Below, in pieces: positions 41,016 through 44,567 of a stretch of DNA of 64,000 bases. Below the pieces are notes generated by a model that saw only the letters and a list, made by a program, of their open reading frames with translations, was not told the DNA's origin and searched no databases. Where the stretch lies: the sequence record NC_047815.1. One strand, 5' to 3'. A program made the translations under genes and the position numbers. How positions within the stretch are numbered: position 1 is the first letter of the stretch; every line of letters begins with the position of its first letter.

Positions 41016-41029
41016 CTGAACTACCCTTT

Positions 41030-41113
41030 GGCCTTACGTTATTTATCCATCCCTCCTGACAGAGGTTGCGTAAGGTCCTTTTTAAAGCGTGTTTTCGAGC
41101 GTGCTTTAAAAAG
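41030..41113 (+). ncRNA. Two-stem RNA module 1
   Basis: Stem 41030-38/41069-77 directly followed by CTTTTTAAAG hairpin 41078-41113. Confidence 0.5.
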
Positions 41114-41157
41114 CTGATAACTAGAAAACTCACCTTCTAGTTGGTACGTGAAAGCTG

Positions 41158-41209
41158 CAAATCTGCGGTCAAAACAGTGCTAGCAACAAGCGAAACGCTG
41201 TGCTACAAT
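41158..41209 (+). promoter_or_regulatory. GGTCAAAA-class promoter
   Basis: GGTCAAAA 41167; TG-C-TACAAT 41204. Confidence 0.85.
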
Positions 41210-41215
41210 ATATGT

Positions 41216-41540
41216 GCAGCATGTCGTGTGCTGTAACATCGAGGAAACTTGCTAGTCTTTGAGTCTCTATCTATATGTGCGGCCATGCACTGATATGAGA
41301 CTCCTTTTTAAAACAGGTTCAATGAGCCTAGTTTAAAAAGCAATTAAAGCCAAGAGACTTCAACCCACTACTTGGTTAGTAACACCTCTGGTGCCAGGTC
41401 GGCGGCTGCATCCCAGAGACTGGGGCCTGGCTCCCTTTTTAAAGCTGATTTTGATTAGTCAGTTTTCGAAAGGGTTCGATACCCTTGAGCGCATTTGGAT
41501 TTACGCGGTTTTCACCAACTGTGCTCTCATATTAAACCGC
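41216..41540 (+). ncRNA. ~330-nt structured leader with modules 2 (41261-41340) and 3 (41390-41472)
   Basis: Consecutive hairpins, no credible ORF between promoter and ATG 41554. Confidence 0.55.
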
Positions 41541-41553
41541 AAAGGAAATAACA

Positions 41554-42267
41554 ATGCCTACATTACGCAAACCTCGTCCAGCAGATAAGTTCTCTCAAGC
41601 TCGCGCCGCCAAGAACTCTCCTGAACGTCAAGAAGCAGCCAAGAAGAAAGTGCCACGCGGTCCTAAATCAGCAGGCCCTCGTCGCAATACTGTCCAAGTG
41701 GAACGCGCTGCTACGATACGCGACGAGGACCGTGTTGTAAACCTCGTGCTGTTTATCTTACGTGGTTGGAAACAAGCTAAGGCGGATAGTGAAGCCAGCG
41801 CTGCACAGGGCATCATTAAGGTAAGTCGTCGTGAAATCGAACTAGCTTTACGCGATCTCAAAAACACGCGTTTCACTAAAATCCCGACACTGATTAACGA
41901 TGTGTTGGTCTACAACGAAATCGTAAATGAGTTTGGTCAGTGGGTGTACGTAGAGCATGATAGTCCTGACTGGATGTTCATCTTAACGCCAGATCGTGAA
42001 ACGCTTGTGACACGCTGTCGCATTCGCCGCAATAAAGAGACAGACGACCTGACACAGCTCATATCCTCAGAAGTTCTGTTGAAAGATTGGAGCGAAGAAG
42101 AGGTAGAGATAGACGTCTCAGAAGAAGGCGAGGAGTATCAATCATGGACCCTCAGCCAACTTCAAAACTTTGCTAAAGCCGAAGGTTACATGGGCATCAA
42201 AGATGAAGGATGGAACGATCGTTCAGCACTCATTGCTCGAATCATCAACAAGGGCGCAATCAAATGA
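41554..42267 (+). CDS. Hypothetical protein: basic N-terminus, C-terminal HeH/Rho-N-like module
   Basis: WTLSQLQNFAKAEGY...RSALIARII; AAGGA SD. Confidence 0.8.
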   Translation: MPTLRKPRPADKFSQARAAKNSPERQEAAKKKVPRGPKSAGPRRNTVQVERAATIRDEDRVVNLVLFILRGWKQAKADSEASAAQGIIKVSRREIELALRDLKNTRFTKIPTLINDVLVYNEIVNEFGQWVYVEHDSPDWMFILTPDRETLVTRCRIRRNKETDDLTQLISSEVLLKDWSEEEVEIDVSEEGEEYQSWTLSQLQNFAKAEGYMGIKDEGWNDRSALIARIINKGAIK

Positions 42268-42593
42268 GTCTGACTATTCGTTCTGCCGCTGAGGCCGCCT
42301 CGATGATCGTAGAAAACGTTACTCTTTACTCTAATGAGAAAGAGTTCGAAACAATACTACCTCGCTTTAAAATGCCAGAGACGGCGATACGTCGAATTTC
42401 AGGACACGCTCGCATAATACCTGAAAGTTATATCGAACAATTGTCTGTAGAAATACAGCAACTCGATTGGATGCTGCTGCGATGTAGTGCAAAAGAATTT
42501 ATCTTTATGCATTGTGATGTACCGTCAAACTGGACGACATTGAGTGCCAAGCGTGTGGCGCCAAATCATAGAGACGACTCAGTAGACGATTAA
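42264..42593 (+). CDS. Hypothetical protein
   Basis: Overlapping ATGA. Confidence 0.7.
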   Translation: MSLTIRSAAEAASMIVENVTLYSNEKEFETILPRFKMPETAIRRISGHARIIPESYIEQLSVEIQQLDWMLLRCSAKEFIFMHCDVPSNWTTLSAKRVAPNHRDDSVDD

Positions 42594-42621: not shown

Positions 42622-42673
42622 CAAATAGATGGTCAAAATAGCGGTAGATTTCTACCGCTATTTTTGATACACT
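42622..42673 (+). promoter_or_regulatory. GGTCAAAA-class promoter with perfect 14-bp inverted repeat
   Basis: GGTCAAAA 42631; AAAATAGCGGTAGA-TT-TCTACCGCTATTTT 42635-42664; TG-A-TACACT 42668. Confidence 0.85.
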
Positions 42674-42679
42674 AGAGAT

Positions 42680-42806
42680 CAAGCAGTACATCTTTTTAAA
42701 GTGTTCTAAGTGGGATTAGAGTGCTTTACAAAGAGCAAGACTTTTGACTGTGTGGCGGACTTCTAATGTCCGATGAATACGCGTTCAACGCCACACAGTC
42801 CTTTTT
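42680..42806 (+). ncRNA. Candidate small RNA (~125 nt)
   Basis: Own promoter, no ORF, hairpin 42692-42733, 12-bp stem 42746-57/42789-800 with two inner hairpins, then CTTTTT. Confidence 0.6.
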
Positions 42807-42833
42807 GCAGAGAGCACCATCTAGTGTACTGTG

Positions 42834-42885
42834 CAAAACAGTGGTCAAAATGACCGTTGCTTTTAACCATGATTTTTCGTACTAT
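42834..42885 (+). promoter_or_regulatory. GGTCAAAA-class promoter
   Basis: GGTCAAAA 42843; TTGCTT 42857; TACTAT 42880. Confidence 0.8.
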
Positions 42886-42947
42886 TATATCTCTTGAGCA
42901 ATAACGCTCAACGCTATATCATCTACTAATACTGAGGAGTATTAATT

Positions 42948-44567
42948 ATGGCACGTCTCGAAACTTCTTCAAACCTGGTTGGCAAATCTATCGTTCTGCT
43001 GAACGGCACCAAAGCTAAAATTGTTGACGCTATCACAAGCGGCTACAAAACTGATAAGAGCGCGAAGCGTATCGCCACTCGCTGCGTTATCAAGAAGGGC
43101 ACTGGTTACGCAGAAATTGAACGTATGCCGCTGACCCAGCTTGTTGACACGGGTGAGGGTTATGTTGAAATCAAATCTGCTGACTCGAAAGCGCCTGCTA
43201 AAAAGACCGCTGCTAAGTCTACAGCAAAAGCATCAACCAAGACCACAACGAAAACTTCCGCCAAAAGCTCAACCAAAGCCGCAGCGAAAGCTGATAGCAA
43301 ACCAGCAGCAAAAGCAAAAGCGCCTGCTAAAACAAAAGCAGCCGCTAAGAAAGAAGAAGCCGAAGCGCCGCGTAGTCGTGTTCGTCGTAAGTCTGCACAG
43401 CCGACTACTTTGACCGCTATTGATCAAGAGTTCACCGAAGCTCTGGTGATGCGTGTTGTTGAGCATTTGAAATCAGGCAATCTGCTGTCACTTGCTACTG
43501 ACGGTGTTACGCCGATTGATAACGCGTTTGAAGTTACTTATGATGCGCAGTATGCAGCGCCGAATCAATTGCAGTTTACTATCGGTGTTGAGTATGCGAT
43601 GCCGCAGCAAGCCGCTGCAAACGATGCAGTAGAAATCAGCGCAGAAGTGCTGGAGCGTGCTGCTAAGAAAGTCGGCAAGACCATCGGCAAGAAACTTGCT
43701 GCTGCTATCAAGTCTGCGTACGGCGTAGACAGTGCGAAAGACCTGCTTGCTGGTACCGTACTGCGTCACGGCGATGATGAATTCATCTATATCGGTGCAA
43801 GTGCTGCCGACGCTGATAAAGCGTATATGTACAACGCCGAGTCTGATAAGTTTCGTGCAGTAGCCGCTGCTAATCTGTCTAGCTATGAGCTGGTGGCTGA
43901 CGAAGAACAAGACGAAGACGAAGAAGAGGAAGAAGAAGACGACAACGCTGACCTCGACTTTGAAGACGACGAAGAAGAAGAGGCTGATGACGAAGAAGCC
44001 GAAGAAGAGGAAGAGGACGAGGAAGAAGAAGCCGAAGAAGAAGAAGACGGCGAAGAATCTGAACCTGAATATTCTTATCGTTCAATCTCGAAAGATGAAT
44101 TGAGCCTCGTCAATAAGAAAGTAACTGCTAAGTATGTGGCGCAACTTGCTGAACAGTGGTCGCTTGATGTTGAAGCTCTGGTGCCTGGTCTGATTGTGTC
44201 AGACGGCGAAACCGAGTTCGCATATGTCGGCTTCGACTCTAAAGGCGGTCTGGTAGTTATCGATACACAAGACGGCGAAGCGATGGTCTACGCTAAAGCA
44301 CAGGTTAAATCGCTGACTGAGTTTGCCGCTGTGTTGGGCGACGACGAGACCTCTGACGAAGAAGCAGAAGAGGAAGAAGTTGAAGACGAAGAAGACGAAG
44401 AAGAAGACGGCGACGATGATTTTGACTTCGATGATGCCGACTCTGCTGACCTCGATGATATGTCAGAAGATGAATTGCGTGATAAAGTGATTCAAGCAGG
44501 TCTGACTACCGTACGCAAAGCTGGTCGCATGAACGAAGATGAATTACGCGAACTGCTGGCTGACTAA
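42948..44567 (+). CDS. Modular protein: K/A-rich segment, two D/E tracts, C-terminal 39-aa HeH-like module
   Basis: GAGGAG SD; composition read from translation. Confidence 0.9.
   Translation: MARLETSSNLVGKSIVLLNGTKAKIVDAITSGYKTDKSAKRIATRCVIKKGTGYAEIERMPLTQLVDTGEGYVEIKSADSKAPAKKTAAKSTAKASTKTTTKTSAKSSTKAAAKADSKPAAKAKAPAKTKAAAKKEEAEAPRSRVRRKSAQPTTLTAIDQEFTEALVMRVVEHLKSGNLLSLATDGVTPIDNAFEVTYDAQYAAPNQLQFTIGVEYAMPQQAAANDAVEISAEVLERAAKKVGKTIGKKLAAAIKSAYGVDSAKDLLAGTVLRHGDDEFIYIGASAADADKAYMYNAESDKFRAVAAANLSSYELVADEEQDEDEEEEEEDDNADLDFEDDEEEEADDEEAEEEEEDEEEEAEEEEDGEESEPEYSYRSISKDELSLVNKKVTAKYVAQLAEQWSLDVEALVPGLIVSDGETEFAYVGFDSKGGLVVIDTQDGEAMVYAKAQVKSLTEFAAVLGDDETSDEEAEEEEVEDEEDEEEDGDDDFDFDDADSADLDDMSEDELRDKVIQAGLTTVRKAGRMNEDELRELLAD

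What the first reader, a model, noticed from the sequence alone, without database searches (positions are those of the whole stretch)
42622..42806. Dedicated promoter driving an ORF-less ~125-nt RNA
Seen: two class promoters 212 bp apart with no ORF or SD between them. The interval folds into a ~18-bp hairpin and a three-way junction (12-bp perfect stem, two inner hairpins) followed by CTTTTT. The promoter carries the longest perfect inverted repeat I noticed in the window. Inference: a separately regulated phage sRNA.
Basis: partly seen in the sequence, partly recalled or inferred. Interest (0 to 1): 0.68.

Follow-up and report, generated by a model that had tools for sequence, protein, structure and literature searches.

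The report
Promoter-proximal terminated RNA in jumbo phage
Between two genes of the Erwinia jumbo phage Yoloswag, a full-strength early promoter fires into about 125 bases of tightly folded, non-coding RNA that ends at a terminator just before the next gene's own promoter. It is a credible but untested phage small RNA, built from the same hairpin modules as a neighbouring mRNA leader.

Summary
The window is Erwinia phage vB_EamM_Yoloswag. The stretch lies in the 354-bp gap between gp313 and gp314. Two perfect copies of a ten-member early promoter class sit 212 bp apart. The class is CAAA-N3-TGGTCAAAAT-N28-TAnnnT, mostly with a TGn extended -10.

No credible ORF lies between the two promoters. 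The interval folds into an 18-bp hairpin plus a branched 12-bp stem followed by C-U5 (z = -5.2).

The only orthologue is in pEa_SNUABM_5, where gp313 is 29% identical in protein. There the branched stem keeps all 12 pairs through four double changes. A 19-22-nt apical sequence is nearly unchanged, and a 1-nt indel destroys the only ORF.

- The perfect palindrome inside P1 is one of the phage's 17 canonical terminators. It ends gp313 transcription, as in the PeSL terminator-promoter composites of T4-like phages, and is more likely that than an operator.
- The RNA is not unique. It is built from the same "hairpin, C-U5, U-tract-capturing hairpin" modules that occur three more times in the adjacent gap, where they lie in a leader.
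- SNUABM_5 keeps the RNA without a recognisable P1.

No RNA-seq run was listed, so the choice between a stand-alone sRNA and a leaky-terminator leader stays open. Earlier notes of this scan on the same genome describe the module family; nothing was found on other DNA.

The parts
42264..42593 (+). gp313 (109 aa, unknown function), the upstream gene; context only
   Evidence: Annotation. Matches phrog_26231, unknown function. 29% aa identity to gp329 of pEa_SNUABM_5.
42622..42673 (+). Promoter P1. Elements: CAAAT 42622-26; 10-mer TGGTCAAAAT 42630-39; -35-like TAGATT 42645-50; TGn 42665-67; -10 TACACT 42668-73.
   Evidence: One of 10 genome-wide class members, with fixed 28-nt spacing.
42635..42669 (+). 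Perfect 14+14-nt inverted repeat (42635-48 / 42651-64) running into T5. It is the intrinsic terminator of the gp312-gp313 transcript, embedded in P1.
   Evidence: I3. and 75 folds (-20.5 kcal/mol). One search lists it among the 17 canonical hairpin+T5 terminators of the genome.
42678..42806 (+). Predicted P1 transcript of about 125 nt. Start is inferred 5-8 nt after the -10; the end is in the U-run.
   Evidence: fold, z = -5.2. The start and end are inferred, not measured.
42692..42733 (+). SL-b hairpin (module D). It runs CUUUUUAAAG...CUUUACAAAG, about 17-18 bp, with loop GUGGGA.
   Evidence: Covariance model R1 scores 45.5 bits, E = 6e-6. It is 71% identical to the SNUABM_5 copy.
42746..42806 (+). 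Terminator T. A perfect 12-bp stem (42746-57 / 42789-800) closes a 31-nt apex (42758-88), followed by C and U5 (42801-06).
   Evidence: I8; -27.1 kcal/mol; 8 pairs identical, 4 compensatory, 0 broken compared with SNUABM_5.
42762..42783 (+). Conserved apical core, TCTAATGTCCGATGAATACGCGT-like. It is kept in SNUABM_5 with two 1-nt indels while the flanking stem covaries. Candidate recognition site.
   Evidence: It is unique in the genome. Of public viral contigs, only SNUABM_5 shares it.
42802..42838 (+). Weak SL-b-like hairpin that would form only in read-through RNA. The U-run of T pairs with UGCAAAA of the P2 upstream element.
   Evidence: folds.
42833..42885 (+). Promoter P2 of gp314. Elements: GCAAAAC; 10-mer 42842-51; -35-like TTGCTT 42857-62; -10 TACTAT 42880-85.
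   Evidence: It is 75% identical in SNUABM_5 and present in all relatives.
42894..42950 (+). gp314 leader: 5' hairpin 42894-42911, SD GAGGAG, ATG at 42948.

Best explanation
P1 to T is a genuine, separately initiated early transcription unit that makes a non-coding RNA of about 125 nt.

Proposed sequence of events:
- Host RNA polymerase with sigma-70 starts about 42678-42681. This phage group has no RNA polymerase of its own.
- It transcribes the 18-bp SL-b hairpin and then the branched hairpin T. Most polymerases stop in the C-U5 run at 42801-42806.
- gp314 is served by its own promoter P2, 36 nt further on.
- Upstream transcription from gp313 is stopped by the terminator embedded in P1. The RNA is therefore insulated on both sides.

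The product is a compact RNA made of two elements of a lineage-specific module family. Its sequence-conserved parts are the AU-rich base of SL-b and the 19-22-nt apex of T. These are the likely contact sites for a protein or RNA partner, so I read it as a stand-alone regulatory or decoy RNA.

Shown here: the promoter class, the fold, non-coding status, and selection on the RNA structure. Inferred: the start point, termination at T, accumulation of the RNA, and any action in trans.
For: - Promoter. P1 has a perfect 10-mer, exact 28-nt spacing, TGn and TACACT, and is one of only 10 such sites in 259.7 kb.
- Terminator. T ends in a C-rich arm plus U5, the form of this phage's 17 simple terminators, 15 of which have exactly five T.
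- Fold. z = -5.2.
- Selection. Against pEa_SNUABM_5 (gp313 29% and gp314 49% aa identity) the 12-bp stem shows 4 double compensatory changes and no break, and the apex core is nearly identical. SL-b is 71% identical, against 38% for the stretch before it.
- Covariation. SL-b covaries across 12 copies: pairs 8/38, 15/32 and 16/31 each show 4-5 pair types.
- Non-coding. A frame-shifting indel breaks the only ORF, and there is no remnant of the small gene that Alexandraviruses carry at this position.
- P2 alone has everything gp314 needs and is conserved in all relatives.
- Tandem P1, ORF-less structured RNA, P2 also occurs in Y3 and in an uncultivated relative, IMGVR 3300031370.
- The kind is documented. 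Jumbo phage 201phi2-1 has 11 sRNAs defined by a terminator shortly after a start site (PMC11512511).
Against: - No transcript data. No RNA run was listed.
- No Rfam family matches.
- No target stands out. The best duplexes with 483 phage translation-initiation regions are no better than those of shuffled probes.
- SNUABM_5 keeps the RNA but has no recognisable class promoter before it. There it would be a 3' UTR.
- The same modules lie in the leader of gp312, where they must be read through for gp312 to be expressed.
- A branched 31-nt 'loop' is unusual for an efficient intrinsic terminator.
- Only one informative orthologue exists.
Confidence: 0.45

Rival explanations
1. Cis-acting leaky terminator or attenuator, in the style of lambda PR'-tR'. 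P1 is an upstream tandem promoter of the gp314 operon. T stops most polymerases by default, giving the short RNA as a by-product. A phage or host factor, or simple leakiness, lets a fraction read through. In read-through RNA the U-run is folded away by pairing with the downstream A-run. The conserved apex and SL-b would be the factor's binding sites or stability elements.
For: - Modules of the same build (hairpin, C-U5, hairpin that captures the U-run) lie at 41261-41340 and 41390-41472. These are between the class promoter at 41166 and gp312, which has no other recognisable promoter, so they must be passable.
- In Y3 and IMGVR 3300031370 the P1-to-P2 interval holds one such module and no free terminator. 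SL-b, which is made only after the U-run is passed, nevertheless covaries.
- The U-run of T can pair with UGCAAAA of P2 in read-through RNA.
Against: - P2 already gives gp314 a conserved, complete promoter, so P1 read-through is not needed.
- Read-through RNA would meet a further hairpin plus U-run inside P2.
- No alternative antiterminator pairing for the 5' arm of T is seen.
- No antiterminator protein is known here. gp312-gp314 have no Pfam hit, gp312 has no PHROG hit, and gp313 and gp314 match only PHROGs of unknown function.
Confidence: 0.3
2. The RNA itself has no function. T is kept only as the terminator or insulator in front of P2 (in SNUABM_5, as the terminator of the upstream operon). 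SL-b is a 3'-end stability hairpin. P1 in Yoloswag is a terminator-promoter cassette (PeSL-like) that landed there by recombination.
For: - SNUABM_5 has D+T directly behind gp329 with no class promoter.
- The gene content of this gap differs between genera. Alexandraviruses have a small ORF; others have RNA modules. This is the pattern expected at shuffling points, like the PeSLs of T4-like phages (PMC4122927).
- Every class promoter examined is preceded by a terminator-like element.
Against: - A terminator does not need a sequence-conserved 19-22-nt apex.
- P1 is a perfect copy of the consensus rather than a decaying one.
- P1-type promoters before ORF-less modules recur in three lineages.
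Confidence: 0.15
3. Origin-type element: tandem promoters whose short transcript primes or opens DNA for replication, as at the T7 primary origin or T4 oriF/oriG.
For: Tandem promoters with an ORF-less transcript, AT-rich CTTTTTAAAG motifs, and a locus among genes for DNA-handling proteins (note s1-160782).
Against: - The cumulative GC skew has its extremes at 37 kb and 185 kb, not here.
- The stems covary as RNA helices with variable spacing, which argues against DNA sites.
- There are no iterons.
Confidence: 0.04
4. A small protein is encoded, either the 43-aa ORF 42766-42897 or a shorter one.
For: An ATG ORF exists.
Against: - It has no SD, and its start is buried in the stem.
- It crosses the U-run and P2.
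- The SNUABM_5 frame diverges after 4 codons because of a 1-nt indel, while the RNA pairs are kept.
Confidence: 0.02

Closest known systems
Premature-termination and intergenic sRNAs of jumbo phages (201phi2-1, phiKZ) found by ONT-cappable-seq (PMC11512511)
   Same: A start site is followed within 250 nt by a terminator, in a 5' UTR or intergenic position. The predicted structure is conserved in related phages. Function is unknown.
   Different: Those RNAs were seen experimentally and are made by phage-encoded polymerases in nucleus-forming phages. This one is predicted only, is driven by a host sigma-70-type promoter, lies in the PaBG/Lu11-like group, and has no sequence relation to them.
Lambda PR'-tR' 6S transcript with Q antitermination (from my own knowledge of lambda)
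   Same: A strong promoter fires into a short ORF-less transcript that ends at a promoter-proximal intrinsic terminator just before a block of genes.
   Different: Lambda has no second promoter behind tR', and it has a defined qut site and Q protein. Here P2 follows T, and no antiterminator or qut-like site is known.
PeSL composite terminator-promoter cassettes of T4-like phages (PMC2839356, PMC4122927)
   Same: A stem-loop terminator is fused to an early host-type promoter and repeated at borders of small early genes. The gene content between copies varies between relatives.
   Different: In Yoloswag the hairpin lies inside the promoter, between the -50 element and the -10. Only some of the ten promoters carry one. 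There is no sequence similarity to PeSLs, and recombination at these sites was not tested.
HK022 put RNAs (from my own knowledge)
   Same: Two adjacent hairpins are made just after early promoters and upstream of terminators.
   Different: Here the first hairpin is followed at once by a U5 run, as in a terminator. There is no homology evidence.
Hfq-type base-pairing sRNAs and 3'-UTR-derived sRNAs of enterobacteria (from my own knowledge)
   Same: About 125 nt, with its own promoter in Yoloswag or a 3'-UTR position in SNUABM_5. It has a terminator hairpin with a U-tail and a conserved short sequence.
   Different: The conserved sequence sits in the apex of the terminator rather than in a 5' single strand. 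The U-tail has only 5 U. No target was found.

Membership tests
Trans-acting small regulatory RNA | Own promoter | tested here: met
   Met by sequence only. P1 is a perfect class promoter. It is not conserved in SNUABM_5.
Trans-acting small regulatory RNA | Intrinsic terminator giving a defined 3' end | tested here: met
   Met by sequence only. A 12-bp stem plus C-U5, matching the phage's own terminator form. Efficiency was not measured.
Trans-acting small regulatory RNA | Discrete, accumulating transcript | not testable with these tools
   No RNA run was listed for this phage.
Trans-acting small regulatory RNA | No protein-coding capacity | tested here: met
   There is no ORF with an SD. A frame-breaking indel in the orthologue leaves the RNA pairs intact.
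Trans-acting small regulatory RNA | Conserved accessible seed with complementary targets | tested here: inconclusive
   A conserved 19-22-nt apex exists. No phage translation-initiation region pairs better than with shuffled probes, and antisense k-mer matches are at chance level. The host genome was not tested.
Promoter-proximal attenuator or antitermination leader (lambda PR'-tR' type) | Terminator shortly after the start site and upstream of the regulated genes | tested here: met
   T ends 142 nt before the gp314 ATG.
Promoter-proximal attenuator or antitermination leader (lambda PR'-tR' type) | Alternative antiterminator fold or a dedicated antiterminator factor | tested here: not met
   No competing pairing for the arms of T appears in folds of 42680-42960. 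The neighbouring proteins have no recognisable family. A protein factor cannot be excluded.
PeSL-type terminator-promoter composite | Stem-loop terminator fused to an early sigma-70-type promoter | tested here: met
   The inverted repeat 42635-64 plus T5 lies inside P1 and is listed among the canonical terminators.
PeSL-type terminator-promoter composite | Marks indel or shuffling points between close relatives | tested here: inconclusive
   The gap content differs between genera. The only close pair, Y3 and SNUABM_52, is identical here.
Two-hairpin U-tract-capturing module of Yoloswag-like phages (SL-a, C-U5, SL-b) | SL-b hairpin running CUUUUUNAAG...CUUNNNAAAG | tested here: met
   42692-42733 scores 45.5 bits with model R1. 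It was in the training set.
Two-hairpin U-tract-capturing module of Yoloswag-like phages (SL-a, C-U5, SL-b) | Strong SL-a hairpin immediately 5' of the C-U5 | tested here: not met
   Not met for module D. Only a 4-bp AGAT/ATCT pairing exists, and its 5' arm lies before the likely start. T itself is an SL-a, with stem GACYGUGYG as in relatives, but its SL-b partner is only a weak 7-bp pairing.
Any Rfam family / tRNA / tmRNA | Match to a curated model | tested here: not met
   The best Rfam hit is tsr24 at 14.2 bits, E = 4.7, against a gathering score of 50. ARAGORN finds nothing in the window.

The most novel reading that the evidence does not exclude
The RNA, and the four sister modules in the next gap, would be the cis or trans recognition sites of a still unknown factor that gates host RNA polymerase through 'leaky' terminators. 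The factor could be phage-encoded; the arginine- and lysine-rich gp312, encoded right behind two of the modules, is a candidate. This would be an undescribed early-to-delayed-early switch in the PaBG/Lu11-like jumbo phages, which depend on host polymerase. The P1 RNA would then act as a free decoy or titrator of that factor.
Probability: 0.15. Interest if true: 0.75.

Novelty: new member of a known kind. Interest (0 to 1): 0.45.

Why it matters
Non-coding RNAs of phages are only now being catalogued, mostly in phiKZ-like phages with their own polymerases. This would be a first candidate in the PaBG/Lu11-like jumbo phages of plant pathogens, which rely on host polymerase. It comes with a precisely defined promoter class, a terminator, and a conserved 19-22-nt loop that can be mutated. 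It also ties into a small family of hairpin modules that may show how these phages meter early transcription. The claim can be tested with one Northern blot or one end-mapping experiment.

Tried and rejected
- RNA evidence. No RNA run was listed for this phage.
- Rfam at E up to 10 gave nothing meaningful. ARAGORN found no tRNA or tmRNA.
- More orthologues. Distant blastn with the Yoloswag gap and with the SNUABM_5 gap found only these two phages sharing D+T. The apex pattern in IMG/VR found only SNUABM_5. The same pattern in metagenomes gave 120 rows, truncated, and none had a class promoter together with a U-run or SL-b nearby, so they are chance matches. Y3 versus SNUABM_52 is 99% identical and uninformative.
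- Targets. Antisense k-mers and RNAduplex against 483 phage start regions are no better than chance. The 14-mer at record 193752 lies inside a coding region and has no module fold. The host genome was not searched.
- Repeated DNA site. The apex core is unique in the genome.
- Replication origin. GC skew gives no support.
- Relic of the Alexandravirus small gene. tblastn E is 8.9 or worse on the Yoloswag gap.
- Neighbour function. gp312-gp314 have no Pfam hit. gp312 has no PHROG hit, and gp313 and gp314 match only PHROGs of unknown function. The ESM Atlas gave no usable hit for gp312.
- The simple promoter/terminator scan misses both the class promoters (weak -35) and the long-loop or fully paired terminators. 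I used my own scans instead.
- CRISPR-repeat mimic. I considered this from memory of Erwinia repeats only. The hairpin arms do not fit, and I dropped it.

Full report
**Identity and setting.** The window is the last 64 kb of Erwinia phage vB_EamM_Yoloswag (NC_047815; window x = record x + 195700). All genes around the finding are on the + strand. The finding lies in the 354-bp gap between gp313 (42264-42593) and gp314 (42948-44567), both of unknown function. Yoloswag belongs to the PaBG/Lu11-like jumbo phages. The published genome analysis of PaBG identifies sigma-70-like factor genes as the RNA polymerase component (PMC7412058). Host-type promoters are therefore expected.

**The promoter class.** TGGTCAAAAT is over-represented in the window: 13 matches with up to one mismatch against 5.1 expected, and no shuffle reaches 13. 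Lining up the sites shows a fixed architecture:
- CAAA(T/A), 3 nt, then TGG(T)CAAAAT;
- exactly 28 nt;
- a TAnnnT -10 hexamer;
- a weak -35 (TTGCNT or TAGANN) 17 nt before the -10;
- in 8 of 10 cases a TGn extended -10.

A whole-genome scan finds ten sites with the upstream CAAA, all on the + strand between record 207927 and 250982. Eight of them lie about 35-67 nt before a start codon. For two of these the annotated start overlaps the promoter and is probably miscalled. The two exceptions are the promoter at window 41166 (338 nt before gp312) and P1.

P1 (42622-42673) and P2 (42833-42885) both carry a perfect 10-mer, and their 10-mers start 212 bp apart.

**The interval.** No ORF with a ribosome-binding site lies between them. 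RNA 42680-42808 folds at -44.1 kcal/mol, against -28.0 +/- 3.1 for shuffles (z = -5.2). The fold has an 18-bp hairpin (SL-b, 42692-42733) and a three-way junction. The junction is closed by a perfect 12-bp stem (42746-57 / 42789-800) and followed by C-UUUUU. I call this second element T.

A scan of the whole genome for simple hairpin+T-run terminators finds 17. Most have the form GGG...CCC-T5, so a C-rich arm plus exactly five U is this phage's normal terminator signature, and T fits it.

**The palindrome in P1.** It is the longest perfect inverted repeat within 60 nt in the window. As RNA it is an A-tract, a GC-rich stem and a U-tract (-20.5 kcal/mol), beginning 42 nt after the gp313 stop. 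It is one of the 17 canonical terminators found. Another class promoter (window 18052) also carries a small hairpin plus T-run in the same spacer.

I therefore read it as the terminator of the gp312-gp313 transcript packed inside the promoter. This is the arrangement described as PeSL in T4-like phages (PMC4122927). An operator function is possible but has no support.

**Comparative evidence.** Only pEa_SNUABM_5 (genus Rivsvirus) has an alignable copy of SL-b + T. The two phages are far apart: gp313 is 29% and gp314 49% identical in protein. Yet:
- the T stem keeps all 12 pairs, 8 unchanged and 4 changed on both sides, with none broken;
- a 19-22-nt stretch of the apex (ATGTCCGATGA(A)TACGCGT plus TCTA before it) is nearly identical;
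- SL-b is 71% identical, with an A-U to G-C swap;
- the stretch before it is 38% identical.

Two 1-nt indels in the apex shift the frame of the 43-aa ORF after four codons. The inner hairpins of the Yoloswag three-way junction are not conserved. The apex thus behaves as a conserved sequence in a large loop.

This is good evidence for selection on an RNA, and for sequence-specific recognition of the apex, though it rests on a single pair of genomes. SNUABM_5 has no recognisable class promoter in front of the element. There it would be the 3' end of the upstream mRNA.

**A tandem arrangement in other lineages.** The order P1, then ORF-less structured RNA, then P2 also exists in Y3 (Sasquatchvirus) and in an uncultivated 264-kb relative, IMGVR 3300031370. 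Alexandraviruses instead have a 48-aa gene and a hairpin before P2. The Yoloswag gap holds no remnant of that gene.

**The RNA is built from a repeated module.** CTTTTTAAA(R) occurs on the + strand four times in record 236778-238392 and once elsewhere in the genome. Each cluster copy starts a hairpin (SL-b) whose 5' arm is C-U5-AAAG and whose 3' arm is CUUUAAAAAG-like. In three of the four copies, SL-b is immediately preceded by a long, often branched GC-rich hairpin (SL-a). The U5 therefore looks like the U-run of a terminator that is 'captured' in read-through RNA. Copy positions are:
- A: 41030-41113
- B: 41261-41340
- C: 41390-41472
- D: 42692-42733

Relatives have one or two such modules each, always in these two syntenic gaps. 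Twelve SL-b copies align with covariation at several pairs. A covariance model finds no further copy in Yoloswag and only weak extras in five relatives.

T has the stem GACYGUGYG of SL-a hairpins in relatives. In read-through RNA its U-run can pair with UGCAAAA of P2. So the P1 RNA is SL-b of one module followed by SL-a + U5 of a second.

Modules B and C lie between the promoter at 41166 and gp312, and must be passed for gp312 to be expressed from that promoter. This is the main argument for the rival reading, in which T is a leaky terminator or attenuator and the short RNA is a by-product. Two earlier notes of this scan on the same genome describe the modules in similar terms. I reached the description independently and tested it.

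**Weighing.**

For a stand-alone RNA:
- a perfect promoter;
- insulation by terminators on both sides;
- a complete, conserved P2 for gp314;
- a sequence-conserved apex that a mere terminator does not need;
- retention of the element whether it is fused to an mRNA (SNUABM_5) or separately transcribed (Yoloswag).

For a cis role:
- the family context above;
- the covariation of SL-b, which is made only after a U-run has been passed.

Nothing computational separates the two readings. There are no RNA data, and no target signal among phage start regions. No alternative antiterminator fold appears, and the neighbouring proteins are uninformative. I put a discrete roughly 125-nt product at about 0.6-0.65. 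The readings are weighted as follows:
- functional stand-alone RNA: 0.45
- attenuator or leader: 0.30
- functionless by-product of a terminator-promoter cassette: 0.15
- origin and peptide: a few per cent together.

**Comparison with known systems.** Short transcripts defined by a terminator just after a start site, some conserved between genera, have been mapped in jumbo phage 201phi2-1 and phiKZ (PMC11512511). This candidate is a new member of that kind, in an unrelated phage group that depends on host polymerase.

In architecture it also resembles the lambda PR'-tR' 6S transcript (my own knowledge). Its promoter-with-terminator resembles PeSLs. It is not a member of any Rfam family.

**Verdict.** It is a real, conserved non-coding unit, moderately interesting, and its function is open.

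Noticed in passing
window 41016-41553: The neighbouring gap holds three more two-hairpin modules (A 41030-41113, B 41261-41340, C 41390-41472) around a class promoter at 41166. It also has a T-arm-like hairpin, AAGGG-TTCGATA-CCCTT, at about 41470-41490, which is conserved in SNUABM_16 and SNUABM_5. The annotated gp311 (41391-41588, GTG start) overlaps module C and is probably not a gene.
   Followed up: partly
window 29271 and 34727 (record 224971 and 230427): The annotated starts of gp290 and gp300 fall inside or directly after the -10 of class promoters (10-mers at record 224937 and 230379). They are probably miscalled, and the true starts are likely further downstream.
   Followed up: no
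whole genome (G000): The ten class promoters are confined to record 207927-250982, all on the + strand. Each is followed within about 5-30 nt of the start by a small 5' hairpin. The phage's simple terminators mostly have the form GGG...CCC followed by exactly five T.
   Followed up: partly
window 42884-42911, minus strand: A 10/12 sigma-70 match (TTGAGC-16-TATAAT) on the minus strand arises from the palindromic 5' hairpin of the gp314 leader. It is followed at once by a terminator-like hairpin (42855-42843). The -10 is not kept in SNUABM_5, so it is probably spurious.
   Followed up: partly
L004 1360-1400 (pEa_SNUABM_16) and the same place in other Alexandraviruses (L008-L017): In place of the P1 RNA, these phages have a 48-aa ORF followed by a conserved 7-bp hairpin, CAGGCAG-N8-CTGCCTG, just before P2. 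Its loop and arm contain GTTCACTGCC on the minus strand. From memory this resembles the start of type I-F CRISPR repeats. The arm order does not fit a Cas6f hairpin, and I did not test it.
   Followed up: no
window 41554-41700: gp312 has a very basic, low-complexity N-terminus rich in Arg, Lys and Pro, and is encoded directly behind modules B and C. No family or fold hit was found. It is a speculative candidate for an RNA-binding factor.
   Followed up: partly
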